The notes: a model not told the origin generated them from the sequence alone. Positions 9,067 through 38,296 are shown, counted from the first letter of the whole stretch. The stretch is DNA of 63,287 bases, filler included, from Octopus bimaculoides (GCF_001194135.2; 6 parts of 5 records of this genome joined end to end with filler, not necessarily neighbours in it); one strand, 5' to 3'. Program-made: numbers and translations.

Positions 9067-9320
9067 TAGGTGATACAAGAAAGGGACAACAAAACATCCA
9101 GATAGACGATACAAAGAAAACACAGACAGGTCATTCGGAGTTTTCTTTCCTCAGTCGAGATCCAGATTATCCTTGCAATTTCGGATGATTATTCTCGATA
9201 TTGCTCCAATCTGGCCAGCCCCAAGGAAAAACTAAGCTAAGAGTATTAGATTCCTTGGAAGAAAGCAGCGAATGTATACAAAAAACAAGGATGGAAAAAA
9301 ACGAAATGTTACATGCTTGT
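9067..9320 (+). repeat. Dispersed repeat, same family as the fold-back at 56858-57240
   Basis: CATTCGGAGTTTTCTTTCCTCAGTCGAG...CTCCAATCTGGCCAGCCCCAAGGAAAAACTAAGCTAAGAG is near-identical to both arms at 56858-57240. Confidence 0.85.
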
Positions 9321-9335
9321 ATTTTATTACTTCGC

Positions 9336-9337
<2 letters not shown>

Positions 9338-9397
<60 letters not shown>

Positions 9398-9446
9398 GTT
9401 ATTATTATTATTATTGTTATTATTATTATTATTGTTATTATTATTC
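9338..9446. repeat. (ATT)n microsatellite
   Basis: Direct reading. Confidence 0.95.
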
Positions 9447-10911: not shown

Positions 10912-10953
<42 letters not shown>

Positions 10954-11476
10954 CACTTATCTATCCACTTCAAAAGTATACACACCTGTACGTATATACA
11001 TACGTATATGTATATCTCTGTGTTGGTGAGTATATATAAGAGTCCTCACTATATATACACTTGTCACCTATTTAACACCTAACCGACACTCAATGAGAAA
11101 AAGAAAATAGCGAAATATATACATAAAAATAAAATACCAAACGAAAATAATTCAAAATTCTTGTATTTAGATGTCAAGTATGTGTTTAAGAGGTCAACAG
11201 ATTTAGCAGGCGTATATACGGATATGTTTGGGGAAAGAAAGGATAAGCTGGTATTAATTGTTTATGGCAATATGGTACAATGGGTATATACAAATATATA
11301 GGGTTTCGTATGCGGGGGTTAGTTTATTTCTCTGTCTATGTATGTATGTATGTATGTATGTATGTATGTATGTATCTATATATCTATCTATCTATCTATC
11401 TATCTATCTACATATCTATCTATCTATCTATCTATACATACATACATGGAGACAGACAGACAGACAAACAGACACG

Positions 11477-11509
<33 letters not shown>

Positions 11510-11590
11510 GCAAATATACGTATGCATACGTATATTCAAATTCTATATGAATGCATATATATATGCGTATATATAAACATATATATATAT

Positions 11591-11690
11591 NNNNNNNNNN
11601 NNNNNNNNNNNNNNNNNNNNNNNNNNNNNNNNNNTTAATTAATTAANNNNNNNNNNNNNNNNNNNNNNNNNNNNNNNNNNNNNNNNNNNN
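11591..11690. other. Artificial scaffold-joining spacer (44N-TTAATTAATTAA-44N)
   Basis: Exactly 100 bp; TTAATTAATTAA is palindromic with stops in all six frames. Confidence 0.95.
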
Positions 11691-13259
11691 GAAATGTGAT
11701 TTGATACTGAAATAGTTTTCTTTTTCTCCTTCCTTTATTTTTGTATTTGTTGTTGGATTTTTCATAAAGGCTCATTAAGAGAAAGTAGGAGTTGAATGGA
11801 TTTGTATTAGAAAGAGGAAATTAGATTTTATTAGGGAGAAAATGTTTACTTGTGTAGTTTTAAGGATTTTATTCGCTATTAGGAACTTTTTGGAGTGAAA
11901 AAATGACGCAGTGACCTAACTTATTGTATTTAGAATATTAATTGCGATTGTTTAATCGAAGAAATTTTGAATTGTGTAAATGTATGAATTTTAAACATAC
12001 ACACACACACAGAGTAGATTTGCCTTTTATAGTATAGATATATGAATGACATGTTTCTTGTAATGAAAAACCTTGACAAATAATGCTTTTACAGATGACC
12101 TCAAAGCAAATCTTCTACAAGTTTACACCAACACAAACTTGTTTGCAAGGATTTAAACTTAGCTTCAGATGACAAACTTACCATGCTCATCTAGATTAAG
12201 CTCTCTAATTAAGGCACAAAATTGTAATAGCAAAAAAAAAACAAAAAAAATAAATAAAATAACATAAAAATAAAAATAAAATAAACCTTTAAGATAGTAT
12301 TTTCCAAAAGCATAATAACTACACAAATCTTTCTTAAGACACTACATTGTCCACATATAATAATAAATACTACAGTGAGCAAAACCCTGACAGCGATAAT
12401 TTCACCAACACTCTGACCAATATTTCAGGCAACATTCTGTTAGTAACAAAGTTAATTATAAATTTCTTAATAATAAATGTAATAGCAACCACAGCAACTA
12501 AGAAGAATCCACAAACATTTTCAACAAGGCACAAGCTATTTTATTCATTCAACAAAGCTATTGAAAAAGAAAGCCATATCTTCCTAAACTCAAACTTTTG
12601 TGTTGTGTTTAACAAGACAGATTTCAAAAACTGCAAGATATGCAAACAATTCTGAATTAACAGGCCTGCAAGAAATCTTGGGTGTCTCCAATGTAATTTA
12701 GTGTCTCAAGATAATGCGCTAAGACCCTGCTTGAAGCTCAGTCAATTACTTTAGGAATTACATTAGAAAACTTGGAGCTTTCTGATTTGGCAGGCGCTAC
12801 TTGTTTTCTTAATGAAACACTTTCAAACTTGGGGCACTGGTAGAATGTGTCATATAAAACATCTTTTACTCTTAGTGTTATTGAGAAAATTTTATCTTTT
12901 TAAAGTTATTTCATGTTAAAATTGTCGTATTTCGGTAATTTCAACCAATCACTGATGTCTATTGAGGTGAAAACAATTACTGCTGTGGAATGTAAACAAC
13001 ATGTTCTAGCGGAGTAATGGGATCTTTTCCCTTGAATAAAATTAGTGCCGTTGTTTGTCAATAACAACTATCAGTGGTACTGTTATTTATGACATCGTTC
13101 GTGCATTTGTACTGGTTTTAGCTTNNNNNNNNNNGGTAATTTCAACCAATCACTGATGTCTATTGAGGTGAAAACAATTACTGCTGTGGAATGTAAACAA
13201 CATGTTCTAGCGGAGTAATGGGATCTTTTCCCTTGAATAAAATTAGTGCCGTTGTTTGT

Positions 13260-13490
13260 CAATAACAACTATCAGTGGTACTGTTATTTATGACATCGTT
13301 CGTGCATTTGTACTGGTTTTAGCTTTAGGGTTTTAGGGTTAGGGTTATGAGTATTTTTGCTAAATTTGGTTAAAAAGTTTGTGGCGGTGTATTGAACAGA
13401 TTTTCACCAAATGTGGCAAAAATACTCATAACCCTAACCCAAATGCACGAATGATGTCATAAATAAAAGTACCGCTGATAGTTGTTGTTG
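13260..13490. repeat. Fold-back inverted repeat containing TTAGGG-like units
   Basis: 13260-13310 pairs with 13440-13490 (about 4 mismatches in 51); 13337-13369 pairs with 13407-13439; TTTAGGG-TTTTAGGG-TTAGGG at 13325-13346. Confidence 0.85.
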
Positions 13491-13570
13491 AGTACTTCTA
13501 TGTTTTTAGACCACAGAATAGTAAACAAAAGTTCTATATATATCTGTGCACATGTGCACACACACACACA

Positions 13571-13851
13571 CAGGGTGCATTAACTTAAAAAATAATTTTA
13601 AAGAAAACAAAGTATTTATTAGAAAAACCTATACATTTTTTTATAGAATTTGGTACACATATTCTTACATATAGCAAAAGGCTATTAATAAAACCACCAT
13701 CAGCTTCAATTACTGCCTCAATACAGGTGATCTTTATTCCCTAATAGCAGATTAGCAGATGAGTCATTGATGTTGTGGGCATGCTTGATGGTCTCCCTCT
13801 CAATGATGCCCCAAACAGGAGAGTTTGGAGGCCAAATATTAGGTTTAACAT
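13571..13851 (-). mobile_element. Tc1/mariner maT-like transposon, 3' piece (transposase C-terminus and end)
   Basis: Minus strand reads HVKPNIWPPNSPVWGIIERET, a decayed WPPNSPDLNPLDY..WG motif; element end begins CAGGGTG at 13571. Confidence 0.7.
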
Positions 13852-14705
13852 GGCTTGGCTTCATGCTCTTGCTTGATGAGGCTGGGGTCAGTCCAAGTTA
13901 GCAGTCCTAAGTTAGTGGTCATCATGCATAGAGCCAACCAGGTTCACCAGTGCTCTCCATTGCAGGTGGACCTGTGCCAGCCACTTTGCATTCTCCAATG
14001 TAATGTTGATCCTTTGGAAATCTTCCCCAATCATGTCCAGCTATCTGGAACAGGCCCCTTCCAGCCTGCAGCAGCTGTATTGGATGAAAGTAAAGCCCTG
14101 GTAGGATGATCTAGTGGAAGGTGGAGGACATGTTCATACCAGTGCATGGGGTGGATAAGATGAGTTGGGAGGCTGTGGGATGATGTGTACATGCATGCAG
14201 TTTCTTGTTAGAAATGTGATTGTACCATCTGATGTTCTTAATGGTTCTCAGGGCTCTGCTATAGAAGCTATCAATCCTCTTTGCCAGGGTCTTTGAAGGG
14301 GTCCACATTTCAGCTCCATAGAGGAGAATGAAGAGGATATGTTGTAAATGCAGAGCTTTGTCTTCCGGGAGATAGAGTATTGGCACAAGAGGGGCTTCCA
14401 TAGGGAGTACATGATCCCAGAGGCCAGACCACATCTGCAGTTGATCTCCATTGTTGGTGGCTGTGGAGTCCAGGTAGATGGAGCTGACAAACGTCACAAT
14501 GTCAGGGCCAATATGGAGATGGGGATGATCCAGGCCATCTCCGACATGCCTCAACTCGGTCTTCTCCCAACTCACTTGAAGGCCAAGCTTTGCTGATTAT
14601 TCTCTGTAAATGGTCAGTGTATCCCTGCTGAATAGAGTTGTATCATCCATGTACTTCAGGTCAGTAAAGTGGTAGTTCCTGACAAAGTCATTATCACAGA
14701 AACTA
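13852..14705 (-). mobile_element. RTE-like LINE 3' fragment, inserted in the maT-like element
   Basis: Minus strand gives FTDLKYMDD (RT YADD-equivalent), LGLQVSWEKT and ILLYGAEMWT...RALRTIKNIRWYNHISN; many frameshifts. Confidence 0.75.
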
Positions 14706-14975
14706 CCAAGTGTAACATAATCGTGAAAATTTTTGATCATCTACTCCTGCATCATGCAGGCCGTGTGAGAGGGAGTCTTGCTGGAACATGTACAGCTTCC
14801 TCTGAGCAACTCTCTCAATCCAGGGCATGACAACTGTTTTCATTGTTTTGATGTAGCCTGTTACATTGACCATAAGACCATGTGGGAAAAAGTGAAGAGG
14901 CATGACAAGGCTCTCATTACTCACAGCCCCCAAGACCATCACATACAAAGGGAACTTGGTGTGCATAATAATAAT
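14706..14975 (-). mobile_element. maT-like transposase, central piece
   Basis: ORF 14703-14966 TKFPLYVMVLGAVSNE...PLHFFPHGL.VN..GYIKTMKTVVMPWI...YMFQQDS is typical of maT/DD37D-type DDD domains. Confidence 0.75.
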
Positions 14976-15315
14976 AAATAAATAAATAAATAAAAAGTAA
15001 AGGAAAAATAAGCAGCACTATATGATACAAAAATAATGGATGACAGATCTCAACATATGAGTTGTGGAAAATAATATATGAGATGCTGTAGTAGTATGCA
15101 TCTGTGTGTGTGCAATTTATCTATATATGCAGGTATATACGTGTGCAAGCTTGCTATACAATATATCAATACTCATTTAAATCCTCTGTCATCTGTTCTC
15201 AGAGAGTCGGCATACTGAATTTTGAACTAAACACTTCTCACAGCTTCCTCTCTTCCACAGATACTTTCCAATGAGAACATCTAGCATATACTATTCATTT
15301 GTATAAAGAATCCTG

Positions 15316-15480
15316 CACTCTCTGAGTGGTTGGCATTAGGAAGGGCATCCAGCTGTAGAAACTCTGCCAAATTAGATTGGAGCCTGGTGTTGCCATCCGG
15401 TTTCACCAGTCCTCAGTCAAATCGTCCAACCCATGCTAGCATGGAAAGCGGACGTTAAATGATGATGATGATGATGATGA
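15316..15480 (+). mobile_element. 3'-terminal fragment of the RTE LINE family (or a derived SINE) with (ATG)n tail
   Basis: Reverse-complement match to 17455-17610; ends CATGGAAAGCGGACGTTAA(ATG)n. Confidence 0.8.
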
Positions 15481-16849
15481 ATTCTTACAAGTGCAGCTGC
15501 TGTTCCAGCACACTCTTCTTTGCAACTTCCATAGATCTAGATTCAGTGTTGCTTAATAAAGCTTGCTCTTTGCAAAAAAAAAAAAAAGAAAGAAACTGAC
15601 TACTTTACTGCCAGTTAAAGAACTAGCTTGTGATCTTTGTTTTTTACTCTTTCTTTAGCTACCATGCTTTGAGCTACAGCCACCACTGGAACTGAATAAC
15701 ATAAAATATCAACTATGTTGTGAGACATTTGATAAGTTAATGGACTTCATTTGTGGGTGCTCCTACTATTAACACATATCTATCACATCTGAAATTCTGC
15801 TTCTATGTTTATCTGTACCTTTAATGTACTCATAGTTTGCACTGGGTACTAAGTATCAAGTTTTTAACTATAACCATTATCTACATTGACCAAACCACTT
15901 CCCACCTGGCACTAGAATCTAGTGCTTTGTTACTATGACATTAGACTTTGACAATTAAACTCTAGATCTATGGAAGGAAGTGGGCTGAATTTAATAGTAA
16001 TAATATTAACAGGTGCAGGCATGGCTTAACCAAGCTGAAACAAGTCCAGAGTTATAACAAAACTTACTGAAAATGAGACTTACTCTCCTGACAATTTTTG
16101 TTATTATTTGTTATACTATCAGTATGACATCCATGACTTGGTACAAATCTAGTTGCATTTTATTCAAAATGACCCTTTTGTTTCATTCAAAAATCCAAGC
16201 ATTGAATGTAATAGTATGTTTAATGACTATGGGACAAGAGGTCAATGGAGTTTGCAAGGGTCATACATGAGTAGTAATACTTTCCAAAGCTAGACAGAAG
16301 TATACAAATTGAACAACGATTCTGTACTGGTTAGCAGATGCTAATCATCTTAATCCCTGTGCTGTCAGAACACATTATACATCTTCTTTCAATTTCCATA
16401 TCTTCTAGATGCAGAAAGCAGTGTTACCTGCACCATCCGTTTTTGTTTTGACTTATGAATTTATTATCAATTAGACAAAAAGAAGAATGAGATATTTTTG
16501 TAAAGAAAGAAAAAGTTATGAGTTGAAAGATAGTTACTATCACCTACAGAATGAGGTAAGATATAGTTTTGCTAAGAAAATAGCTAAGAAAACAGTTCAT
16601 AATGCACTTACTGTTGACAATGAAGACTAAGTTTTTACATCATTACAATAGATTAAATCGTATAATGGCTAACAGTACAGTGAATAAGAGTACTGACATA
16701 TTTATCTTGGATAAGTGTTGGCTCAATTCTCAAAAATATAAATAGTGAATATAAAACAAAAAATCCAAATCATGATGATGATTATAGAATCTTATAAAAT
16801 GAAATATAGCAAAAAACTGTAAAATGAATAGAGAGATTAAGCAACAAAC

Positions 16850-17012
16850 CTTAGAATCATGCCTTGATGTATTGAAAACAGATAGTGACAAAGGAAGTAG
16901 GTGTGCTTCAGTCGTAAAGATGTAATCATTCAAATCTAAAATCAAATCTTCATCTTCAGCAAACAAAAGATATAAATATTTGAAAGTTTCAGCCAAAACA
17001 AATGAATCCATT
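16850..17012 (-). CDS. EDEM3: EDEM3-like ER degradation-enhancing alpha-mannosidase (GH47), single internal exon
   Basis: Encodes (R)[44 protein letters not shown]. This matches the GH47 C-terminal motif, and the [17 protein letters not shown] pattern fits EDEM3 rather than EDEM1/2 as I recall them. Acceptor TATTTCAG (phase 2) and donor AAG|GTTTGT (phase 0). Confidence 0.88.
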
Positions 17013-17447
17013 CTGAAATATTAAAAAAAAAAAACACAACAACATAAAACACCAAAATAGAATAGAGTAAGAATAGAAAATAGTATATCAGCCTCCTTAT
17101 TAAAACACTGTAACAGCTTCAAACAAACTGGCAAAATTTTATATATGACATAACAGGTTAAGATTTCTTACCTTTTTACCTTTTCAGCATTTAAATTGTA
17201 AATTGCATTATACATGCAATTAAATTGTACATGTGCAAATACATTAAAATATAAAGTAAGTTTAGATAAGGTAAAATCCTGGTGTATTCCTTATGCAGAG
17301 CTCAATACAAATTCCTAGCTATCTACGTGTTAAGACTGGTATTTCAGAATGAGCATGGACACAGGGACTCCAAGTACTTATCACTGGTATAATGAGCATG
17401 TAAGTATTTGATAGGATAACATATGAGAAAAGGAAGATGAATATTAA

Positions 17448-20400
17448 TCATCATCATTTAACGTCTGCTTTCCATGCTAGCATGGGTTGGATGATTTGAC
17501 TGAGAACTGGCGAACCAGATGGCTGTACCAGGCTCCAATCTGATCTGGCACAGTTTCTACAGCTAGATGCCCTTCCTAACACCAACCACTCCGAGAGTGT
17601 AGTGAGTGCTTTTACGTGCCACCAACATGAGGGCAAGCCTGGTGGTACTGGCAACGGCCATGCTCAAATGGTGTTCTTACGTGCCACCTGCACAGGAGCC
17701 AGTCCAGCGGCGCTGGCAACGACCTTGCTCAAATATTTTGTTCATGTGCCAGTAAGGCGACACTGGTAACGATACCGGCATGAAAGCCAGACCGCTGCTC
17801 TGGCAGTGATCCCGCTTGTATGGTGCTGTTAGCGCTCCACTGGCAAAGGTGCCAGTCATCGAATTTGGTTCATTTACGATTTCACATGCTCCAACAGGTC
17901 TTCGCAAGCAGAGTTTAGTGTCCAATGAAGGAGAGGTTGGCATGGGTGCCAGTCATTGAATTTGGTTCGATTTTCATTTCACTTGCCTCAACATGTCTTT
18001 GCAAGCAGAGATTTGTGTCCAAAGAAGGAAAAGTACGCATAAGTGAGCTGGCTACACCCCTGGTAAAGGCCACGAGTTAGGATCTCACTTGTCTTGCTGG
18101 GTCTTCTCATGCACAGCATATTTCCAAAGGTCTCGGTCAGAAGTCATTGCCTCGGTGAGGCCTAATGTTCGAAGGTCGTGCTTCACCACCTCATCCCAGG
18201 TCTTCCTGGGTCTACCTCTTCCACAGGTACCCTCAACTGATAGGCTGTGGCACTTCTTCACACAGATATCCTCATCCATTTTCACCAAATGACCATACCA
18301 GCGCAATCATCTCTCTTGCACGCCACAACTGATGCTTCTTAGGTCTAACTTTTCTCTCAAGTTACTAACACTCTTTCGAGTATGCACACTGACGTTACAC
18401 ATCCATTGGAGCATACTGACTTCATTCCTTGCGAGCTTACACATGTCCTCAGCAGTCACGGCCCATGTTTCACTGTCATGTAGCATGGCTGTTCATACAC
18501 ATGCGTCATACAGCCTGCTTTTTCTACAGATCGAACAGGGCCATCTACCTGAAGGGGTTGGTGTTTTCTCTATCTTCCTACTTATTAGGACTTTGGGCTT
18601 AGCTAGGTTGACTATAAGGCCATTTGATTCTATTCCTTGCTTCCACACCTGAAACTCCTCTAGTTCTGATAATGACTCAGCAATTAGGGCAAGGTCATCA
18701 GCATAGAGGAGTTCCCTGTCTTGAATTCCTCTGCTATTGCCTGGAGGACTATGATAAATAGGAAGGGGCTGAGGACTGAACCTGGGTGGACCCCTACCTC
18801 TACCCACAATTCTTCACTGTACTCATTGCCAACACTCACCTTACTGATGGCGTCCCTGTACATGGCTCACACAGCTCTCACTAACCCTTCATCTGTCCCT
18901 AGTTTCCTCATTGTCCACCAGATAACGGATCAGGAGACCCTGTCAAAGGCTTTCTCTATGTTGACGAAAGCCAGGTACAGAGGTTTATCTTTGGCTAGCT
19001 ATTTCTCCTGCAGCTGTTTTACCAGAAATATAGCATAAGTGGTGCTTTTCCCTGGCACAAACCCAAACTGCATCTCATCTAAGCTGACACTTTCCCTAAT
19101 TAGTTGGGCTATGACCCTCTCCGTGACTTTCATTACCTGATCCAACAACTTGATACCTCTGTAATTGTTTGTGTCTAAAGCGTCACCTTTACCTTTGTAG
19201 CAGTTGACTATGGTGCTGCTACACCAGTCATTGGGTATGGCTCCTTCGGGTGTCACCTGGTTAACTATACGGGTAACTAGGCTATAGCAGACACTGCCAG
19301 ATATTTTGAGCATCTCTGCAGTGATTCCAGATGGGCCGGGGGCTTTCCCTGTCTTCATACTCTTAATTGCTTTATCTACCAAGGTACTGTCAATTAGGAT
19401 AGCTGGTCCCTCTTTCTCCCATTCATTCTCTTTATTAAGCAACCTTTCATAATGGCATCTCCAAACCTCTTTCTTTGCAGCCTTGCTTAGTGCAAACGAG
19501 CCATCATCCATGTGGACACATATCTCTCTTACGACATCACAATTCTCTCTCATACACTGTCTTGCAACACGAAATACTTCAAGTCTTTGGTCCTCACGAC
19601 GCAGAACATTGGCAAATTTATTCTTATCTGCTTCCCCTCTGGCTAAATAAACCTGTCTCCTAGCTTCTGGCAGATTGATACAATTCCCTGCTACCACCGT
19701 TCTTCCAGTCCTTCCAAGCCTGTTTCTTTTGTCTAATAGACCTGTCAACCACATTGTTCCACCACCACATTATGTTGGGTCAAGAGGGAACTTTGCACCA
19801 ACCACAGATCTGGTCAGTGGCTCTCTGCAGGTTGTCCCGTAGAAACCTCCAGTTGTCTTCCACATCATGTTATGCTACATCCCCTTCTATTTTGTCAAAT
19901 GCTTTGAGTAAGACATTTCTAAATCTCTGCCCATTTGCTGGATCTTTAAGCTTCCAGACCCCCTCTCCTCCAAGCTGGTCTACTTCTGGGCATCCATTTA
20001 GCCCTGATCCCGAAGTCGCTAACTACTAATCTATGTTCAGGGGTACATCCTTCACCTGGGAAGGTTTTGGCATTTATAAGCAGCCATCTTTCCCTTTTTC
20101 TGGCGAGAATGTAGTCAATTTGGCTAGTGTGCCTGCCAGAACGGTAGGAGACTAGGTGACAGGCGGGCTTCCTGAAGTTAGTATTACAAACCATAAGATC
20201 GTTTGCATCACAGAACTCCAGCAGTCTGGTGCCCTCTTCATTGCGGGAATGAAAGCCATAGCCTCCATGTACGCCATGGAAGTCCCCTGCATGTTGTCCA
20301 ACATGTCCATTGAAATCACCAGCTACAAAGAGAAGGTCCCTGTCATTTGTTGACATGGTAGTCTGCAGTAGGGTATCATAAAATTGGTCTTTCTGCCCAT

Positions 20401-29033: not shown

Positions 29034-29065
<32 letters not shown>

Positions 29066-29339
29066 TTAGGGATAAAAATCCAAATTTACAGGTAAAAACT
29101 CAATTAAATTCAATTTATCAAAAATTAAAATTAAATTAAGTTTCACAGTATAAACATATAAATATATAGTTTTAAAGAAAAGAACCAAAGTTCATGAACT
29201 AATCCATGAAAATCCACAGTCACATATAGAAAAATTTAATAAGTAAATGCACGATAAATATATATATTTTAGTTACTTATTTTTTATTATTTATTTTTAG
29301 ATAATTTGAAAATCTGTTGGCTGTCTGGTTGGTTTGATT

Positions 29340-29737
29340 ATGTCATCGATTCCCGATAGTTTCTTCAACTGTTGCCCGTTTCAGACTCCCATGTCACCCG
29401 TGCCTTTCGACATAAGAACCGAGGGTCTAGAATCGCCCACATTGAATCCTGTGACTGGTCGTACCAATGAAGTCTTGTCTCCTTCGGTTGTTTTGCCAAT
29501 TCCTGACGCTAGAAGTTTTCCAATGCATCTCGATGGCAGTGACGACCTCCAAGACCTGCGTTCTTTGCACGCTACGACAACGCCTGTCTTACCAACAATC
29601 CACGCTTCATCTCCACATCTATCGGCGATATCAACTACAGTCCCGCTCGTCCGGATCGATGACACGAATACAGCGGAGTCACGGAATGAAGAGTTGAAGT
29701 TACCATTTTGTCACAACCAGCTTAACAACAACAACAG

Positions 29738-29771
<34 letters not shown>

Positions 29772-29810
29772 AGCTGCTATAACAATAGCAGCTGCAATGG
29801 CAACGATGAT

Positions 29811-29842
<32 letters not shown>

Positions 29843-30195
29843 AACAAATGATATTATTACTACTACTGCTACTACTACTACCACTACTACCATTTTCAAT
29901 ATTAACAATACCAACAACAACTTTAACAACGGTGATAACATAGATTTCGACTTTGAGAACATGACCATCAGAAGCCACATTCCTTTAGTGAAACCAAATT
30001 CTTTCGAGGCGTCCTGTTCTTCATCTGATATCTACAGTGACAACGATTGGTCTGTGAAAATGGCCAATACAGATCTATACCAGCTCCAACAACAGCCATA
30101 CTTAAATTACAGTAACGCTCAACAGGCAGAAATTCCAGACTTAATCTCCTTACCTGCATCATTAGGCAGTTATGATAGATGTAAAGCAACTACAG
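29340..30195 (+). CDS. ESE-type ETS transcription factor (ELF3/EHF/ELF5-like), coding exon 1 (Pro/Ser-, Asn- and Thr-rich)
   Basis: Acceptor TTATTTTTAG at 29300, in-frame stop at 29307, ATG at 29340, 285 open codons, donor CAG|GTAACG (phase 1) compatible with exon 2. Confidence 0.75.
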
Positions 30196-30445
30196 GTAAC
30201 GTATTTACGGTATCGTTAGACCATTTTTTAAAAGTTATCTTTACAGATTTCCTAAAGAAATTAGAGCAAGCACAGACTTGTTACGACGTTTTGTATACGA
30301 ATACGTATTAAAAAAATGCGAGCGAATACAGAAAAACAAATAATGGGTATAGATGAATGTTTCAGGCGTTCTGGCATCACATGAAACCCTTTGATCCTCC
30401 ACGAATACATTGCTTAAAGCAGTGGTTCTCAACCTTTTTCTGTAC

Positions 30446-30652
30446 TTCAACCCAATCGAAAATCTTTGATCCATCATTAAACAAAATGTTTATACTGATG
30501 GAGGCCAATTTACGTCACAAGATGTCTTATTGGCGACCATCAAAGCTGCAGCAGAGACAATCCAGCCTGCTACTATTAAGAAATTCACAGATTCCACGAC
30601 TAATAGGGTTTTTGAAGTAATCCGTCGAAATGGCGCTCATGTGGCTAAATAA
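30446..30652 (+). mobile_element. Tc1-family transposase C-terminal fragment (intron 1)
   Basis: FNPIENL*SIIKQNVYTDGGQF...RVFEVIRRNGAH; matches the LNPIENLW motif with a TGG>TGA change. Confidence 0.8.
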
Positions 30653-32164
30653 TTCATTATGTCAATAAATGTTATAATATTATTATGGTTTTCTGTTAAA
30701 CATATATTCAATGTATGCTTAATATGTATCATAAACCTTTATTTTCTGAAAAAAAAAAAATGTCTAGATGGGCTATTTTCATTCAAAAGCTATTAGCGTG
30801 GTTCACCCCCAAAATGAAGAATCTGAAATAAAAAAGAAAGGACGTTTCATAGAATAATGAAAACATAACAACGGTGTTGCCATAGTGCGCAAACCAGCTG
30901 GGAAAACCTGGGAAAAGTTTTATCAAAATCGATTCACAGAAAACCGAGAACCCAAAATTTCACTCCTAAGCTATTAGCATTGTTCTGGGAGTACCCCNNN
31001 NNNNNNNNNNNNNNNNNNNNNNNNNNNNNNNNNNNNNNNNNNNNNNNNNNNNNNNNNNNNNNNNNNNNNNNNNNNNNNNNNNNNNNNNNNNNNNNNNNNN
31101 NNNNNNNNNNNNNNNNNNNNNNNNNNNNNNNNNNNNNNNNNNNNNNNNNNNNNNNNNNNNNNNNNNNNNNNNNNNNNNNNNNNNNNNNNNNNNNNNNNNN
31201 NNNNNNNNNNNNNNNNNNNNNNNNNNNNNNNNNNNNNNNNNNNNNNNNNNNNNNNNNNNNNNNNNNNNNNNNNNNNNNNNNNNNNNNNNNNNNNNNNNNN
31301 NNNNNNNNNNNNNNNNNNNNNNNNNNNNNNNNNNNNNNNNNNNNNNNNNNNNNNNNNNNNNNNNNNNNNNNNNNNNNNNNNNNNNNNNNNNNNNNNNNNN
31401 NNNNNNNNNNNNNNNNNNNNNNNNNNNNNNNNNNNNNNNNNNNNNNNNNNNNNNNNNNNNNNNNNNNNNNNNNNNNNNNNNNNNNNNNNNNNNNNNNNNN
31501 NNNNNNNNNNNNNNNNNNNNNNNNNNNNNNNNNNNNNNNNNNNNNNNNNNNNNNNNNNNNNNNNNNNNNNNNNNNNNNNNNNNNNNNNNNNNNNNNNNNN
31601 NNNNNNNNNNNNNNNNNNNNNNNNNNNNNNNNNNNNNNNNNNNNNNNNNNNNNNNNNNNNNNNNNNNNNNNNNNNNNATATATATATATATATATATATA
31701 TACGTACATAAAAACAACGCACGCATGAACACATGAACACACAAGAACACACAGACACACACAGACACACACACACACACACGTTTGTGCGTGTGTGCGC
31801 GCGTGTGTGCGCGCGTGTGCTTTCATTATGCATTTATGCATTTATGTTAACGGAATAGTAAAGCCTCTTGTCAAATAACAATGAGATGATTTATAGTTTA
31901 TTAGAAACTTTAGCTTCTCCTAATGCATCCATCAGAGCTGCATGGAACATAATCTTCGCACAGACACACATACGCATAGAAATACATGCACACACACATC
32001 TGTATATATACGTGTATGCATATACGTATGTATGTATATATAGATCTATGTGTACTTAGTATTATTATTAATATTGTTCTTATTTTATTCTTATTCTTAT
32101 CATTAATGTTGTTGTTGTCAATATTATTATTATTGTTGTTGTTGTTGTTGTTGTTGTGATCCAG

Positions 32165-32407
32165 AAATATGCCACCACAATTGGTGGGAAATAAATCCAG
32201 ACTTGTGGAATCTCCGAGAACTGTTAGACTGGATGGCCTATACGTTACAGCTGGACAAAATCAATTCCATTATCTATCTCAATAACTTCTTCCGAGACGT
32301 CAAGAACGGCAGCCAGATGAGACGCATGTCACTCGAAGAATTCCTCGGCAGAGATCCAGATCACGGCTCTATGTTGTTTCAGTCTCTAAAATATTTCAGC
32401 GAATATG
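32165..32407 (+). CDS. ETS factor exon 2, Pointed (PNT/SAM)-like domain
   Basis: EICHHNWWEINPDLWNLRELLDWMAY...KNGSQMRRMSLEEFLGRDPDHGSMLFQSL fits the PNT pattern P..W....V..W...NG..L..MS.EEF....G..L...L. CCAG| acceptor and G|GTTAGT donor, phase 1/1. Confidence 0.82.
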
Positions 32408-32419
32408 GTTAGTAAATAT

Positions 32420-32714
32420 ATTTGGCTTCACTTTTTCTCCTTCTTTTCCCCTTCTTTTTCTCTTTCTTGTTTTTCCCTTTCTTTCTTTTCCCCTTTCTTT
32501 CTTCTTCCCTTTCTTTTTTCCCCTCTCTTTCTTTTTCTCTTTCTTTTTTTCCTTTCTTTCTTTTCTCTTTCTTTCTTTTCTCTTTCTTTCTTTTTCCTTT
32601 CTTTTTCTCCTTCTTTCTTTTCCTTTTCTTTCTTTTTCCTTTTCTTTCTTTTTCCCTTTCTTTTTCTCTTTCTTTCCTTCCTTCCTTCCTTCCTTCCTTC
32701 CTTCCTTCCTTCCT

Positions 32715-32757
<43 letters not shown>

Positions 32758-32758
32758 G
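32420..32758. repeat. Polypyrimidine/polypurine tract ending in (CCTT)n(CTTT)n
   Basis: Direct reading; almost no purines on + over about 340 bp. Confidence 0.9.
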
Positions 32759-33289
32759 TCGGTTGTTTGCCTACGAAATACGCCTATATTTAGAAACAAA
32801 AAAAAAAAAAATGAATATGAAATAAATCAGTTGAATTTTGTATGAAACACATGTCTTGGGCAAGACATTCAACTGGATCCCGTTATAAGGTACCAGCTTG
32901 GGAGTTTTGGAGTTAGGACGGGTATGGAGTTACCCCTTAGTCACCACTACCCTCAAATCTGCAATTTCGTCCGGTAACGCTATCGGTAAAACCATCATCC
33001 GACAAATGATAGATACATGACCCGTGCCCTGTCAGCAACCGGTTGTTCTTTCTCTCTCTAGAAAGGACACTTACGGTATATAATATATTGAATTATTTAC
33101 AACACATTTTGTGAGTTGTAGTATTTATCATTGGCCCCAGTTACGGGTCAAAACGTAGGAGAGGGTCCAGCAGCTAAAGCGTACTGGACCCGAAGGAGGG
33201 CTGACTCCTACACATGTGTTACACAGGCATACCTGTATGTCGGAATGCCCTAATGTCACGTGAATCGTCCTTCGTTACTACCTAAAGAT

Positions 33290-33454
33290 TACTAGCGTAG
33301 CTAGAGCGTGCGCCGCCCGGAGAGGCCCTTCCGTTCGCAGCTCCAGGACCCCACGAAAAACCACATTGCCTACAGCAGACCCAAAAGTGATGTTCCTTTA
33401 AAAATGCCGCCCAGGGTGAACCGCCCCTACCGCCCCCTCCTAGCTACGCTAGTG
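33290..33454. mobile_element. 165-bp hAT-type MITE
   Basis: 15-bp TIRs TACTAGCGTAGCTAG / CTAGCTACGCTAGTG (14/15); 8-bp flanks CTAAAGAT / CTAAGGAT (7/8). Confidence 0.8.
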
Positions 33455-33993
33455 CTAAGGATTACACTGGTTTTGTGCCTTGAGGGTCGTTTTATTCTCG
33501 TAGTTTCTTTCTTCGAACTGCTACTCTCTGGAACTTATTACCATTGTCTCGTTTTCGTCTGGTCTATGATATTCAGTCCTTTAAATTTTCTGTCAGTCAA
33601 TGTCTTTTGATTTTGTAGGTGCCTTCTTTTCATATAGATCCCTTCTTTTCATGTAGTGTAGTTCCTACACTATAGCGACTCAAGCCATATTAGAAAAAAA
33701 AATCATATTAAAACAATTGTAGGATTACATTCGAAATAACTGGAGACCAATAGAGTAAATTCTAAATAAGACGGCAGAAGATAACGGGAAACCATTGCTA
33801 TATTCTTAAGGAAAATCAATAAATTTTCACTCTTTGGTATGAAAGATCATGATCGCTTCCGACGCCAGTAAACATGGTACAGGAAGCGGAAGAGATGAAG
33901 CACAAACTTAATAAATGGCTTTGTCTTTGTTTTTTTTAATATTTGTTCATTCATTATCGATATGTTTTCTTTTAAACATAGTTATCTTTGCAG

Positions 33994-34185
33994 GGAATAT
34001 CCTCTTTGATGATAATAATCATTTTGCTTCACCAAAGGAATATTATTCCGTCGAGTGCATCAAGGACGCTCACTACAACATGGAAATGAACGATGACAAA
34101 CTTGATAACTTTTACCCATTAGAGTTCGGTAGATTTCCTCTACAACCGCAACAGCAACACCACACTGCTTTACTGAACAGTTCAA
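33994..34185 (+). CDS. ETS factor exon 3 (linker region)
   Basis: Acceptor TCTTTGCAG|, open frame GNILFDD...LLNSS, donor A|GTAAGG (phase 1); an alternative in-frame donor at 34129. Confidence 0.68.
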
Positions 34186-35154
34186 GTAAGGATCCGTTAT
34201 TGCGTTATTATTAAACGTCTTCGAAATATGAAAGCGAACAGCTAAAGTGTTATCTATGTTCTTTGCGCTTCGCTATTTCTGTACGTGTATGAGTATATGC
34301 GAGTACGTTTTGTGTGTGTGTGTGTGTGTAATCATGTGTATTTTTATTGGCGTTTTTCCCTTGATGATGGTGGTGCTGGTGGTGGTGGCGGCGGCAGCGG
34401 TGGTGGCGGCAGTAGCGGTGGCGGTCACAGTAGCGGTGGCGGCGGTGTTGGCGGTGACAGGAGCGAAGGAATTGGTTGTGATGGTGGCGGTGAGAGCACT
34501 GAATGCGACTTCTTGCAGTGAGTGAGTCGACGTAAGCTCAGTTCGGTGGAGACCGTTTTTCTTTTGGCTCTTTGCAAAGTTATTGAGAACCGTCAAAATT
34601 GCAAAGGGGTCATTATGATTTCTGTTAGCGCTCACACATTAATTACAATGAAGGAAGGTTGTATGTTTTAAAGTTCTACCACGAATTCGAAGTGCAACAA
34701 GAAAGACACACCATTAGAAGACACGACACTGTGGAATTGTCTGAGATAAAATCGCTTAATAGATTTACTGACTTAAAAACACAATACACTAATCCTTCCA
34801 TTATCGCAGGTGTTACGCTCCAAAATCTTCCGCGATTGGTGAAAATCCGCGAAGTAGAAACAGGACCGTAATGTTTATTTTTTCATTGTTTGTGCTTATG
34901 AAAGAGCAATAACCCTTGAAATATGCATATACACTCGTTAACTATTTTTTTCTTTCTTCGATCGCATTGTTTACATTGACGTATTCGTACAGGACAGGTC
35001 GCAACTTTCAGTGCTGGCTCTAAATTCTATGGAATATCTACAGAGATACACTTAAGAGATAATAAAAATATAACTCTATATTTTAGGAGGTGGTTTGTCC
35101 GTAACGCATATTACTCAACTCTATCTTTATAATCAAATATTACATTTTCTACAG

Positions 35155-35379
35155 ATGTTGTTATACCAAAACTCGAAACACCGTTACTGGGTGAATCTAT
35201 TATCCAAAACAGAATCGATGATAGCGTCCACTCGTGTCAATTATCGACCAACAGTGACGGAAATGTACCGATGCACAGTAACAACCAACAAAAAATGTTC
35301 CAACCGTGCCAACCGAAAAGAAAGCCAGGGCGTCCGAGACTCCATCCTCTCAATAAGGATTCAGCTGGCATCAAGAAAA
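35155..35379 (+). CDS. ETS factor exon 4 with AT-hook-like motif KRKPGRPR
   Basis: Acceptor TTTTCTACAG|, open frame VVIPKLETP...QPKRKPGRPRLHPLNKDSAGIKK, donor A|GTAAGT, phase 1/1. This frame is absent from the ORF track. Confidence 0.8.
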
Positions 35380-35406
35380 GTAAGTTAATGTCGTAATTTA
35401 GCGGAA

Positions 35407-35500
35407 CGGCAATGGTACAGGTGTGGCTGTCAGGTAAGAAGTTTGCTTCCCATCCACATGATCCCGGGTTCAGTCCCACTGCACGGCACCTGGGGTCCGA
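35407..35500 (+). mobile_element. SINE family A head (intron 4); a second head at 35695-35765
   Basis: GGCTGT..GGTAAGAAGTTTGCTTCCCA.CCACATG..CCGGGTTCAGTCCCACTG. Confidence 0.75.
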
Positions 35501-35633
35501 CATATATTTTGTGAGTGGATTTGGCTGACAGAACAATTCCGGAAAATACCATTATCATCTTGGATTTCAGACCAGTTTGTTAAGGGGAAATGCACGAAGC
35601 TCTTTGAGTAACCATGAATATTCTACCACTTAT

Positions 35634-35691
<58 letters not shown>

Positions 35692-35918
35692 GACACAAGC
35701 GTGGCTGTGTGGTTAAAAGTTTGCTTCCAAACCAATGGTTCCGGGTTCAGTACCACAGGGTGGCANNNNNNNNNNNNNNNNNNNNNNNNNNNNNNNNNNN
35801 NNNNNNNNNNNNNNNNNNNNNNNNNNNNNNNNNNNNNNNNNNNNNNNNNNNNNNNNNNNNNNNNNNNNNNNNNNNNNNNNNNNNNNNNNNNNNNNNNNNN
35901 NNNNNNNNNNNNNNNNNN

Positions 35919-35949
<31 letters not shown>

Positions 35950-35962
35950 ACTCACTAACTCA

Positions 35963-35994
<32 letters not shown>

Positions 35995-36234
35995 TTATCT
36001 ATCAACCACAAAAAGGTGTTTACATGCCCATAACTTAGCGGTTCGATAAACAACGCTGATAGAATAAGTATCAGACTTTAGAAAAAGTACTGGAGTTGAT
36101 TGCTTCGAGAAAAATTCTTCAAAGCGGTGCCCCAGCATGGCCACATTCCAACGATTGAAGCAAGTAAAAGATCATATATATATATATATATATATTTGTA
36201 CGTAAGTACGTACACGTGTGTGTGTGCGAGCGTG

Positions 36235-36265
<31 letters not shown>

Positions 36266-36376
36266 ATGCGTGCGTGTGTGTGCGTGTGAGAGTGTGTGTG
36301 TGTTACATTTATGTATGCACGTGAGAAGATATCTGCGATCTGACAATTCTTTTCTTTTTCTTTTTCTTTTCAAAAG

Positions 36377-36569
36377 TGAAAATTCTTCCGCTTTGGGAAT
36401 TTATATACTCCATTCTACAGAACAACAACTTTAATCCTTTCATAATACGATGGGAAGACGAAGCAAACGGCAAGTTCCGCTTTGTTCATTCAGAGAAATT
36501 TGCCAAACTTTGGGGAGAAGCCAAGAACAATGAAAATATGAATTATGAAAAGCTAAGTCGTGCCATGAG
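36377..36569 (+). CDS. ETS factor exon 5, ETS domain N-terminal part
   Basis: LWEFIYSILQ...IRWED...GKFRFVHSEKFAKLWGEAKNNENMNYEKLSRAMR with all three conserved Trp; acceptor after a polypyrimidine tract (CAAAAG|) and donor AG|GTTAGT (phase 2). Confidence 0.95.
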
Positions 36570-36572
36570 GTT

Positions 36573-37125
36573 AGTATGTATGTATGTATGTATGTATGTA
36601 TGTATGTATGTATGTATGTATGTATGTATGTATGTGTGTGTGTATGTATGTATGTATGTACGTCTGTACGTCTGTACGTACATATGCCTGCATGTATGAA
36701 TGTATGTATGTACGTATGTATGTATTATGTATGTACGTATGTACGTATGTATGTATGTACGTATGTATGTATGTACGTATGTATGTATGTACGTATATAT
36801 GTATGTATGTACGTACGTATGCATTCATGTATGTATGTATGTATGTATGTATGCATGTACGTACGTACGTACGTATGTATGTACGTCTGTCTGTCTGTAT
36901 GTATGTATGTACGTCTGTATGTATGTATGTATGTATGTATGTACGTAGGTATGTACGTACGTATGCATGTATGTATGTACGTACGTATGTACGTCTGTAA
37001 GTATGTATGTACGTACATATGTATGTATGCGTATATGTGTAAGTGTATGAATATATTTGTATGTATACATGAATGTACGTATTTATGTATGTGTGTATTG
37101 AATTATGCATATATACGTATGTCTT
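36573..37125. repeat. Compound (TATG)n/(TACG)n microsatellite in intron 5
   Basis: Direct reading. Confidence 0.92.
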
Positions 37126-37574
37126 GACACCCTTTGTCACGTTTAGTCGACGACTATAATTCTTTATGCTTTAGCATTGCACCTAGGTGTTTTTATTAAT
37201 ATAAATGTGTGTGTGTGTATGTCTGTGTGTCTGTGTATACATTCATATGTATGTCTGTATGTGTATATATGTGAACGCATGCTTGTGTATCTGTGTGTAT
37301 ATATGTATGTATGTTGTATGTATAAACATGCATGTATGTGTGTGTGTATGTATGTATGCATCTTTCATCTTTTCCTCGTTTCACTCATTGGACGGTGGTC
37401 ACACTCGGACACCACTTCCAAGGTTTAGTCGAACATATCGTTCCCACAATTCATTTTTGCGATTCTTCAACAGAAACCGATTGAATAAGTACTGGGACCA
37501 ATTTCTTCGTCTAAGACCACCGAAGGTGGTGCCACAGCATGGCCACTGTAAGACGATAAAAAATATTTAAGTTT

Positions 37575-37900
37575 ACTCTTTGTATTAACCGGACAGGTGT
37601 CCTCCTGCTGATTGGTGTTTTTGCTATATTTTAGCTGTTGAACGCTCCAACCTTCTTCAGGTGTCTTGTGCTGAACTCGGCTGTTGTATCGCAATATACA
37701 ACATCGTAACGAAATGTAGGCAACGGAATGAGAACAGTGTATCCCCGTGGATAAAATAAAGAGTTAGGTTCGAAACGTCGATACAACAACAAAGTCCAAC
37801 ACGGCGCCTGACGAAGGCAGGAGCGCATAACTGCTGAAACGGAGTGAAAGCAAACATCAACATGAGGACATCGGTCCGACATATAGAAACGATATACATA
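37575..37900. repeat. Inverted pair of diverged repeats, each with a degenerate hammerhead-like core
   Basis: Minus copy GACAC-CTGAAGA-AGGTTGG..CAGCT-AAAA (core at 37654-37660) and plus copy GGCGC-CTGACGA-AGGCAG..CTGCT-GAAAC (37808-37840) align with each other over about 110 nt. Confidence 0.55.
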
Positions 37901-38030
37901 AATATTTGTGAATTGTATCACACAAATACCTGTAATCTATTTTCGATAGATACTCGGAATCAAATATTCATGATTACAAACTTAGAAATATTTCTCTCTC
38001 TCTCTCTCTTTTTTTTTTTTTTTGTTATAG

Positions 38031-38190
38031 ACATTATTATGGCAAAGACATTATAGAACGTGTTGAAGGACGCCGGTTGGTTTATCGCTTCTTGAACTCT
38101 GCAATGGACCGATTGCGAAAGAAAACTAACCCGGAGATCCCACTTAGCGAAATGCAGCGAAACGGAAGTACAGGATCCTTGAGTAAATAA
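38031..38190 (+). CDS. ETS factor exon 6, ETS domain C-terminus and stop
   Basis: Acceptor (T)nGTTATAG|, phase 2; reads RHYYGKDIIERVEGRRLVYRFLNS...SLSK* with TAA at 38188-38190. ERVEGRRLVYRF resembles ESE-family ERVDGRRLVYKF. Confidence 0.93.
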
Positions 38191-38296
38191 ATAGCTTCCA
38201 AAATTTGAATTTGTTATCGTTGTTAAACTATAAAATAAAATGGAGATCGTGTGTCTGGATGTCGTCAAGAATACCACATAGAAGAGAATACCACAT

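What the first reader, a model, noticed from the sequence alone, without database searches (positions are those of the whole stretch)
29340..38190. Complete six-exon PNT + AT-hook + ETS gene largely hidden from the ORF track
Exons 29340-30195, 32165-32407, 33994-34185, 35155-35379, 36377-36569 and 38031-38190 all have GT-AG boundaries. Their phases (1,1,1,1,2) chain into one 1869-nt frame (622 aa + stop). The ETS sequence and the PNT/AT-hook layout match the ESE subfamily (ELF3/EHF/ELF5), which is known mainly from vertebrate epithelia and has no member among Drosophila ETS genes. It is divergent enough to be a lineage-specific paralogue.
Basis: partly seen in the sequence, partly recalled or inferred. 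Interest (0 to 1): 0.72.

Follow-up and report, generated by a model that had tools for sequence, protein, structure and literature searches.

The report
Octopus ESE-type ETS transcription factor gene
The window holds a real, intact six-exon octopus gene for an EHF/ELF3-like (ESE-type) ETS transcription factor; the family is already known in molluscs, but every public Octopus model found here for this gene is wrong, and it is a second, strongly conserved cephalopod copy.

Summary
The six exons have GT-AG borders and chain into an 1869-nt frame of 622 aa. The piece is Octopus bimaculoides chromosome CM046607.1.

O. vulgaris keeps all ten splice sites, the ATG and the frame (overall dN/dS 0.12; 0 in the ETS domain). 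An Argonauta hians GenBank protein is collinear end to end, from a gene with the same six exons. Both assembly gaps lie in introns and hide no exon.

The protein has a divergent but real PNT domain, a GRP AT-hook about 25 residues before the ETS domain (the position seen in 113 of 118 ESE-like proteins) and a complete ETS domain. That domain groups with EHF/ELF3/ELF5 at 96% bootstrap.

- ESE-type genes are widespread in invertebrates and already catalogued in molluscs, octopus included.
- The locus is already annotated, but all four public Octopus models are defective.
- The gene is a second cephalopod paralogue ("B") beside a pan-coleoid copy ("A"). It is not Octopus-specific: Argonauta has it, and so does an unidentified, more distant organism.

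This is an annotation fix and a modest gene-family finding, not a new kind of system.

The parts
29340..30195 (+). Exon 1: start codon ATG at 29340 and aa 1-285 (plus 1 nt). A low-complexity N-terminal region, with the first residues of the PNT domain at its 3' end.
   Evidence: ORF 29334-30311 is closed upstream by a stop. The ATG, the frame and an upstream stop are conserved in O. vulgaris. The N-terminus MS(S/A)(I/V)PDS.F.CC is conserved in Argonauta. dN/dS is 0.235.
29724..29890 (+). Coding (AAC)n/(TAC)n repeat giving poly-Asn and poly-Thr tracts. Its length varies between species.
   Evidence: Tandem repeats. O. vulgaris exon 1 is 81 nt shorter, in frame.
30998..31677 (.). Assembly gap 1, inside intron 1 (30196-32164).
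   Evidence: The gap persists in GCA_001194135.2. The O. vulgaris equivalent is repeat-only. Protein alignments are continuous across the exon 1/2 junction.
32165..32407 (+). Exon 2: PNT (SAM_PNT) domain, aa 286-366.
   Evidence: Pfam gives 23.9 bits. An ESE-specific PNT profile built without this gene gives 46 bits, against at most 6.3 for 200 shuffles. AlphaFold2 gives pLDDT 88 and five helices. The best fold matches are the ETV7, Yan and TEL PNT domains, TM 0.75-0.84. Splice sites are conserved.
33994..34185 (+). Exon 3: linker, aa 367-430.
   Evidence: Splice sites and length are conserved in O. vulgaris, with dN/dS 0.165. The same junctions are used in XP_052825076.1 and XP_036360403.1.
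35155..35379 (+). Exon 4: linker plus AT-hook, aa 431-505.
   Evidence: 12 nt differences from O. vulgaris: 11 synonymous and 1 non-synonymous in this frame. In the RefSeq frame they are 0 and 12, with a stop in O. vulgaris. The same exon 4-5-6 junctions are used in UniProt A0A0L8HEI6.
35316..35339 (+). AT-hook-like motif KRKPGRPR (aa 485-492), about 25 residues upstream of LWEF.
   Evidence: A GRP motif lies within about 70 residues upstream of the ETS domain, typically 25-35 residues before LWEF, in 113 of 118 ESE-like proteins, vertebrate ELF3-like ones included. It is identical in O. vulgaris and Argonauta.
35766..35918 (.). Assembly gap 2, inside intron 4 (35380-36376).
   Evidence: It corresponds to about 55 bp in O. 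vulgaris (L002 21084-21139). It is flanked by (TG)n and (CTCT)n.
36377..36569 (+). Exon 5: first two thirds of the ETS domain (domain starts at 36391), ending ...LSRAMR.
   Evidence: Pfam Ets. The same intron position occurs in paralogue A, in Argonauta B and in the unidentified B-type contig L004.
38031..38190 (+). Exon 6: last third of the ETS domain (to 38094), a conserved C-terminal tail and the TAA stop (38188-38190).
   Evidence: The tail is identical in Argonauta up to ...SEMQR. O. vulgaris has a TGA stop where O. bimaculoides has GGA at 38164-38166.
35087..35154 (+). 68-nt 5' extension of exon 4 used by RefSeq model XP_052825076.1 (AG at 35085-35086). It shifts the frame and destroys the AT-hook.
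37659..37706 (+). Alternative terminal exon of XP_052825076.1 inside intron 5. It truncates the ETS domain.

Best explanation
This is an intact, expressed-type six-exon gene of Octopus bimaculoides. It encodes a 622-aa sequence-specific transcription factor of the ESE branch of the ETS family (relatives: EHF, ELF3, ELF5, sea-urchin Ese).

**Shown here:**
- The exon structure and its conservation in O. vulgaris and Argonauta.
- Purifying selection on every exon.
- A PNT fold, a GRP AT-hook at the family-typical position, and a complete ETS domain that keeps all but one of the positions at least 90% conserved in ESE proteins, including the LSRAMR recognition-helix arginines.

**Inferred from what is established for ETS proteins:**
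- The winged helix-turn-helix ETS domain binds GGA(A/T) core sites.
- The AT-hook adds minor-groove contacts to flanking AT-rich DNA.
- The PNT domain mediates protein contacts or kinase docking.
- The long, fast-evolving, Asn/Thr-rich N-terminus acts as a disordered regulatory or activation region.

**Place in the family.** The gene is one of two cephalopod ESE paralogues. Copy A (O. sinensis XP 'ETV6-like', Argonauta, Sepia 'EHF') is the more conservative one. This copy, B, took a long early branch. Its DNA-binding module (AT-hook through C-tail, about 130 aa) then became almost frozen, with 3 differences between Octopus and Argonauta. That pattern suggests a distinct, constrained function.
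For: **Exon model**
-.
- Conservation of splice sites, ATG and frame.
- dN/dS.
- Frame test for exon 4.
- Argonauta protein collinear over aa 1-613, with the same six exons.

**Domains**
- ETS.
- PNT.
- AT-hook position in 113 of 118 relatives.
- Only one substitution at ETS columns that are at least 90% conserved.

**Family placement**
- ESE clade, 96% bootstrap.
- Mollusc clade including B, 93-97%.

**Two paralogues**
- Paralogue A identified.
- A and B share a chromosome in O. sinensis and lie 4.6 Mb apart on one contig in Argonauta.
- B-type exon in a more distant organism.
Against: - No transcript evidence could be obtained.
- RefSeq models for O. bimaculoides and O. sinensis use other junctions or frames. 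These may reflect real minor isoforms.
- PNT is just under Pfam's cut-off.
- The AT-hook has PGRP rather than the canonical RGRP core and got no Pfam hit.
- Binding specificity, expression and function are inferred, not shown.
- The trees are NJ on 84-211 columns, and B is a long branch.
Confidence: 0.85

Rival explanations
1. The RefSeq structure (XP_052825076.1) is the real main product. It uses an exon 4 acceptor at 35087, an internal acceptor in exon 5 and a terminal exon at 37659-37706. The locus would then make a PNT protein without an AT-hook and with a crippled ETS domain.
For: The model exists in RefSeq. Its alternative exon-4 frame is open for 97 codons in O. bimaculoides.
Against: In that frame all 12 Obi/Ovu differences are non-synonymous and O. 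vulgaris has a stop. The model discards a 130-aa module that is almost identical between Octopus and Argonauta.
Confidence: 0.07
2. The gene is an ETV6/TEL/Yan-type factor. This is how NCBI names its Argonauta orthologue and the O. sinensis paralogue A.
For: ETV6 is the best non-ESE match in the PDB (80-83 bits). ETV6 also has PNT plus ETS, and the PNT model matches the ETV7/TEL/Yan folds best.
Against: EHF and ELF3 ETS domains score 97-107 bits, against 83 for ETV6. The PNT sequence matches EHF. The ESE clade has 96% bootstrap with ETV6 outside it. The pre-ETS GRP hook occurs in 113 of 118 ESE-like proteins.
Confidence: 0.03
3. The gene is a recent, Octopus-specific duplicate of the cephalopod ESE gene.
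For: The Octopus hits to copy B all come from Octopus genome annotations. B shares 3 of 13 cephalopod-A-derived residues, including NMNYEKL.
Against: Argonauta has a full-length orthologue with a 100% identical ETS domain. A B-type exon 5 that is 84-85% identical occurs in an organism whose introns do not align with octopods. B keeps the ancestral state at 7 of 13 positions derived in all coleoid A proteins. B+A monophyly gets only 10-20% bootstrap.
Confidence: 0.04
4. The locus is a decaying pseudogene or a chance chain of ORFs.
For: No transcript evidence was found. The O. sinensis RefSeq models switch frame within exon 4.
Against: The frame is open in three lineages, dN/dS is 0.12 and all splice sites are conserved.
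Confidence: 0.01

Closest known systems
Vertebrate ESE subfamily: EHF (ESE-3), ELF3 (ESE-1), ELF5 (ESE-2)
   Same: N-terminal PNT, C-terminal ETS domain and, as in ELF3-like proteins, a GRP AT-hook shortly before the ETS domain. The ETS domain is about 60% identical to EHF and ELF3, and these are the best PDB hits. It falls in the same clade at 96% bootstrap.
   Different: It has a 285-aa low-complexity N-terminal extension. The PNT is very divergent (about 20-25% identity). The recognition helix reads RHYY instead of RYYY, and the following segment YYGKDII instead of YYKREIL. Epithelial expression is not known.
Mollusc 'Elf-3-like / EHF-like' proteins (e.g. Littorina, Haliotis, Pecten, Magallana, Mytilus ELF3), catalogued in PMC10664356
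   Same: Same architecture, including the RRPGRPR hook and the KNQHLWEF entry into the ETS domain. It falls in the mollusc clade at 93-97% bootstrap.
   Different: The ETS domain is only 68-69% identical to them, whereas cephalopod A is 76-77% identical. B sits outside the gastropod+bivalve clade on a long branch.
Cephalopod ESE paralogue A (O. sinensis XP 'ETV6-like' P0031, Argonauta P0044, Sepia pharaonis 'EHF' CAE1243261.1)
   Same: Same architecture and the same intron position in the ETS domain. It lies on the same chromosome or contig.
   Different: It is 65-66% identical in the ETS domain. A has poly-Gln linkers and B has poly-Asn/Thr. A is represented by transcript assemblies, while B was seen only in genome-derived models.
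Sea urchin Ese
   Same: An invertebrate ESE-group ETS gene. This shows the group is not vertebrate-specific.
   Different: It is a marker of blastocoelar (mesodermal immune-type) cells, not an epithelial marker. No sequence comparison with it was made here.

Membership tests
ETS transcription factor family | ETS (winged helix-turn-helix) domain of about 85 aa with conserved Trp residues and the two recognition-helix arginines | tested here: met
   Pfam PF00178 at E 6.9e-30, covering profile positions 2-81 of 81. LWEF...W...LWG...YEKLSRAMRHYY is present. Only one deviation occurs at columns at least 90% conserved.
ESE subfamily (ELF3/EHF/ELF5) | ETS domain groups with ELF3/EHF/ELF5 rather than ELF1/2/4, TEL, PDEF or class I members | tested here: met
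   NJ on 84 columns gives 96% bootstrap for the ESE clade including this gene, using PDB-verified outgroups. No ML or Bayesian tree was run, and the outgroup sampling was limited.
ESE subfamily (ELF3/EHF/ELF5) | N-terminal PNT/SAM domain | tested here: met
   Pfam gives 23.9 bits against a cut-off of 24. The EHF PNT matches at E 7e-5. An ESE-PNT profile gives 46 bits against at most 6.3 for shuffles. The AlphaFold2 model matches ETS-family PNT folds.
ESE subfamily (ELF3/EHF/ELF5) | AT-hook between PNT and ETS (described for ELF3) | tested here: met
   KRKPGRPR lies about 25 residues before LWEF. A GRP motif occurs in the stretch just upstream of the ETS domain in 113 of 118 ESE-like proteins, vertebrate ELF3-like ones included.
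ESE subfamily (ELF3/EHF/ELF5) | Epithelium-restricted expression | not testable with these tools
AT-hook motif (HMGA type) | Arg-Gly-Arg-Pro core flanked by basic residues, binding the AT-rich minor groove | tested here: inconclusive
   The GRP core and basic flanks are present, but the core reads P-G-R-P. There was no Pfam AT_hook hit at E<=1. DNA binding was not tested.
TEL/ETV6/Yan subfamily (the name NCBI gives to the orthologue) | ETS domain groups with ETV6/ETV7/Yan | tested here: not met
   ETV6 falls outside the 96% ESE clade. It scores 83 bits, against 97-107 for ELF3 and EHF.

The most novel reading that the evidence does not exclude
Copy B is an ancient ESE duplicate. It dates at least to before the octopod-decapod split, and possibly to before the split of cephalopods from gastropods and bivalves. 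It survives only in cephalopods. After an early burst of change, its AT-hook-ETS module became frozen: 100% ETS identity between Octopus and Argonauta. That would mark a neofunctionalised regulator of a cephalopod-specific programme, for example in skin, sucker or other epithelia. A corollary concerns the published inference that many mollusc ESE genes 'lost the PNT domain', which may partly be an artefact of truncated gene models like those at this locus.
Probability: 0.25. Interest if true: 0.5.

Novelty: new member of a known kind. Interest (0 to 1): 0.27.

Why it matters
**Practical value.**
- It shows that RefSeq XP_052825076.1, UniProt A0A0L8HEI6, O. vulgaris CAI9725254.1 and O. sinensis XP_036360401/3 are all defective.
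- It shows that the 'ETV6-like' names on the Argonauta orthologue and on O. sinensis paralogue A are wrong.

**For gene-family work.** Coleoid cephalopods carry two ESE-type genes. Domain-loss claims drawn from automatic models (PNT-less mollusc ESE genes, PMC10664356) need checking at the genomic level.

**Biologically.** A conserved second ESE factor with a frozen DNA-binding module is a reasonable candidate regulator for cephalopod epithelial cell types. Nothing here shows that yet.

Tried and rejected
- The full-length query to the search for homologous proteins was dominated by poly-Asn words and gave only 4 hits.
- The third and last homology search, with an Argonauta B + P0126 alignment, was again swamped by low-complexity words. 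It returned only the query itself, so that search was wasted.
- It missed the Argonauta orthologue, which one search found. Absence from the word-indexed search is therefore not evidence of absence.
- P0005 was used instead for the representative search. No direct transcript test was possible.
- The O. sinensis model P0006 is not on record, so the A-B distance in O. sinensis is unknown.
- No paper mentions SRR9969973. The organism behind the distant B-type exon (L004, L012) stays unidentified.
- No Rfam family was found in the piece.
- The chromosome-scale O. bimaculoides assembly does not close either gap.
- **Timing of the A/B duplication.** NJ gives B+A only 10-20% support, and B as sister to all other mollusc ESE 65-82%. 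This could be long-branch attraction, so no date is claimed beyond 'before the octopod-decapod split'.
- **Considered and rejected:** pseudogene, ETV6-type, Octopus-only duplicate, and the RefSeq exon structure as the main product (see rivals).


Full report
**1. What the piece is**

Window 29034-38296 is identical to Octopus bimaculoides chromosome CM046607.1 (GCA_001194135.2), locus L001 positions 9074-18336. It is bounded on both sides by assembly gaps. The two internal gaps are still present in that chromosome-scale assembly.

**2. The observation**

- All six exons have AG/GT borders.
- The lengths are 856, 243, 192, 225, 193 and 160 nt, which gives phases 1,1,1,1,2.
- The result is one frame of 1869 nt, or 622 aa.

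**3. The gaps, tested first**

Both gaps fall in introns.
- **Gap 2 (35766-35918, intron 4).** It corresponds to about 55 bp in the gap-free O. vulgaris locus L002. It is flanked by (TG)n and (CTCT)n.
- **Gap 1 (30998-31677, intron 1).** It corresponds to an O. vulgaris stretch made of microsatellites and dispersed repeats, with nothing exon-like.
- **Continuity across the exon 1/2 junction.** The protein runs without interruption against human EHF and against the Argonauta orthologue, whose intron 1 is only about 550 bp.

No exon is hidden in either gap. This is inferred from relatives, because the gaps themselves remain unread.

**4. Is the gene model real?**

*O. vulgaris comparison:*
- The six exons are collinear, at 92-98% aa identity.
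- All five donors and five acceptors are identical, and exons 2-6 are of equal length.
- Exon 1 is 81 nt shorter, in frame, within the coding (AAC)n tract.
- The ATG and an upstream in-frame stop are conserved.

*dN/dS (Nei-Gojobori):*

| Region | dN/dS |
|---|---|
| Overall | 0.12 |
| Exon 1 | 0.235 |
| PNT exon | 0.09 |
| Exon 3 | 0.165 |
| Exon 4 | 0.02 |
| ETS domain and tail | 0 |

dS is about 0.2, against intron identity of 82-91%.

*Independent confirmation:*
- The exhaustive representative search found a 654-aa Argonauta hians protein, GAB1608449.1.
- Its gene has the same six exons within 5.2 kb.

**5. The public models of this locus are defective**

| Model | Defect |
|---|---|
| XP_052825076.1 (O. 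bimaculoides, 'ETS homologous factor-like', 386 aa) | Starts at an internal Met. Enters exon 4 from an AG 68 nt upstream (exon start 35087), so it reads another frame. Re-enters exon 5 internally. Ends in an extra exon at 37659-37706. |
It lacks PNT. | 19 |
| O. vulgaris CAI9725254.1 | Skips exons 2 and 5. | 7 |
| O. sinensis XP_036360401/3 | Switches frame inside exon 4 and stops. | 19, 70 |

The frame test is decisive for exon 4. None is synonymous in the RefSeq frame, which also carries a stop in O. vulgaris.

**6. Domains**

- **ETS.** Pfam E 6.9e-30, aa 511-591. The best solved-structure matches are EHF, ELF3 and ELF5. Against the ESE consensus, B deviates at only one column that is at least 90% conserved (V to F in SE.VA), and it keeps LSRAMRHYY.
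- **PNT.**
  - It is borderline in Pfam (23.9 against a cut-off of 24), but it matches the EHF PNT at E 7e-5.
  - A PNT profile built from 91 ESE-like proteins without B scores exon 2 at 46 bits. The best of 200 shuffles scores 6.3.
  - An AlphaFold2 model of exon 2 has pLDDT 88 and five helices. It matches the ETV7, Yan and TEL PNT domains at TM 0.75-0.84.
- **AT-hook.**
  - KRKPGRPR sits about 25 residues before LWEF.
  - A GRP motif occurs just upstream of the ETS domain, typically 25-35 residues before LWEF, in 113 of 118 ESE-like proteins. These span molluscs, arthropods, echinoderms, a hemichordate and vertebrate ELF3-like sequences.
  - It is therefore an ancestral family trait, although the core here is PGRP rather than RGRP and DNA binding is untested.

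**7. Subfamily**

- Outgroup ETS domains were taken from tool output, not memory: EHF, ELF3, ELF5, ELK1, ETV6, ELF1, ELF2, SPDEF and ETV4.
- NJ on 84 columns puts the octopus protein in a clade with vertebrate ESE proteins and all the invertebrate 'EHF/Elf-3-like' proteins. Bootstrap support is 96%.

**8. ESE is not vertebrate-centred**

- One search returned PNT+ETS relatives from gastropods, bivalves, many insect orders (none of them Diptera among the listed names), crustaceans, horseshoe crabs, crinoids, a sea cucumber and Saccoglossus.
- Sea-urchin Ese is an established marker gene.
- PMC10664356 lists ESE/EHF genes for eleven molluscs, including O. bimaculoides, O. sinensis and Sepia pharaonis.
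- That Drosophila lacks an ESE gene is from my own knowledge of its eight ETS genes. It was not tested here.

**9. Two cephalopod paralogues**

*Copy A:*
- A second octopod ESE gene is represented by O. sinensis P0031 (misnamed 'ETV6-like') and Argonauta P0044.
- It also includes transcript-derived proteins P0009 and P0014, whose 90% cluster contains Sepia pharaonis 'EHF'.
- The A clade has 99.5-100% bootstrap support.
- A and B share the ETS-domain intron position.
- The O. sinensis A and B models are recorded on a contig of the same length (117,540,060 bp), taken here as the same chromosome. In Argonauta, A and B lie 4.6 Mb apart on one contig.

*Copy B:*
- The B ETS domain is 100% identical between Octopus and Argonauta, but only 65-69% identical to A and to other molluscs. 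A is 76-77% identical to other molluscs.
- From the AT-hook to the C-tail there are only 3 differences between Octopus and Argonauta, while the rest of the protein is about 35% identical.

*A B-type exon in a more distant organism:*
- Genomic Logan contigs from SRR9969973 and ERR12921336 carry a B-type exon 5 with the same splice borders.
- It is 84-85% identical to B and 62-64% identical to A.
- Outside the exon nothing aligns with the octopod loci.
- The organism is unidentified.
- Its divergence is comparable to that of octopod versus cuttlefish A.

*Timing:*
- B retains the ancestral state at 7 of the 13 positions where all coleoid A proteins share a derived state. It shares 3 of the derived states.
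- B therefore predates the octopod-decapod split.
- In concatenated PNT+ETS trees (211 columns):

| Grouping | Bootstrap |
|---|---|
| Molluscs including B | 93-97% |
| Gastropods + bivalves | 94-95% |
| B + A | 10-20% |
| B sister to all other mollusc ESE | 65-82% |

- The last figure may be long-branch attraction, so the exact age is unresolved.

**10. Mechanism**

*Shown:* an intact, selected ORF with three recognisable modules.

*Inferred from established ETS biology:*
- GGA(A/T) recognition by the ETS helix 3.
- Auxiliary minor-groove contact by the AT-hook.
- Protein interaction or kinase docking by the PNT domain.
- A disordered regulatory N-terminus.

Expression and targets are unknown. 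No copy-B transcript-derived protein was seen in the searched collections. That argues for low or restricted expression, but it is weak evidence.

**11. Verdict**

The ESE assignment is correct. The claims of rarity outside vertebrates and of a lineage-specific origin are overstated. This is a new, well-supported member (paralogue B) of a known family at an already annotated locus. Interest is modest.

Noticed in passing
window 36574-37098: A (GTAT)n microsatellite of about 132 copies (525 bp) starts 5 nt after the exon 5 donor. More TG/TA-rich repeats follow up to about 37360. On both strands they create long spurious ORFs (MYVC... / HTYI...).
   Followed up: partly
window 32441-32757: About 300 bp of polypyrimidine (TTCT)n with a 59-bp higher-order repeat lies just after the exon 2 donor. 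It gives long spurious ORFs on both strands.
   Followed up: no
window 38164-38166: O. bimaculoides has GGA (Gly) where O. vulgaris has a TGA stop, and Argonauta also ends about there (…EMQRS). The last 8 residues (GSTGSLSK) therefore look like an extension not shared by O. vulgaris or Argonauta, created by loss of a stop.
   Followed up: yes
window 34247-34525 (repeat 34381-34445): A GC-rich (GGTGGCGGCAGC)n stretch in intron 3 is used as a coding first exon (MMVVLVVVAAAAVV...) in UniProt A0A0L8HEI6. It is almost certainly spurious.
   Followed up: partly
window 35087-35388: The +1 frame across exon 4 is open for 97 codons in O. bimaculoides. This probably lured the RefSeq model. The same frame has a stop in O. 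vulgaris.
   Followed up: yes
This is either an assembly indel or a real frameshift in O. sinensis. The locus could not be fetched.
   Followed up: partly
L001 21068-27749 and L002 25943-34257 (downstream of the piece): The next gene downstream, on the opposite strand, encodes an SRCR-domain protein in both O. bimaculoides and O. vulgaris. This is conserved synteny.
   Followed up: no
window 36016-36272: This intron-4 segment matches several other places in the O. vulgaris locus (L002 5595-5835, 19562-19711, 23515-23665) at 68-71% identity. It is probably a dispersed (SINE-like) repeat.
   Followed up: no
P0111 (Nilaparvata lugens), P0031, P0123, P0054, P0074, P0077, P0093: Several database names look wrong. 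P0111 ('ecdysone-induced protein 74EF isoform X2') hits EHF, ELF3 and ELF5 best and has the RPGRPR hook. The cephalopod proteins P0031 and P0123 are named 'ETV6-like', and the crustacean proteins P0054, P0074, P0077 and P0093 'FLI1/ERG/Ets96B/C-ets-2-like'. All of those placed in the ETS tree fall in the ESE clade.
   Followed up: partly
P0124 (representative search hit, 601 aa): This protein has three tandem near-identical partial SPDEF-like ETS segments, each with the same preceding linker. It looks like an assembly or annotation artefact, or a tandem exon duplication. Its source is unknown.
   Followed up: no
PMC10664356, supplementary file 5: The survey's Ob-ETS-1/2 (XP_014767921/2, 271 and 270 aa, 'ESE', no PNT) and Ob-ETS-13 (129 aa) underlie its claim of PNT loss in mollusc ESE genes. 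Given the truncated models at this locus, some of that loss may come from annotation. The sequences could not be retrieved to confirm which locus they represent.
   Followed up: partly
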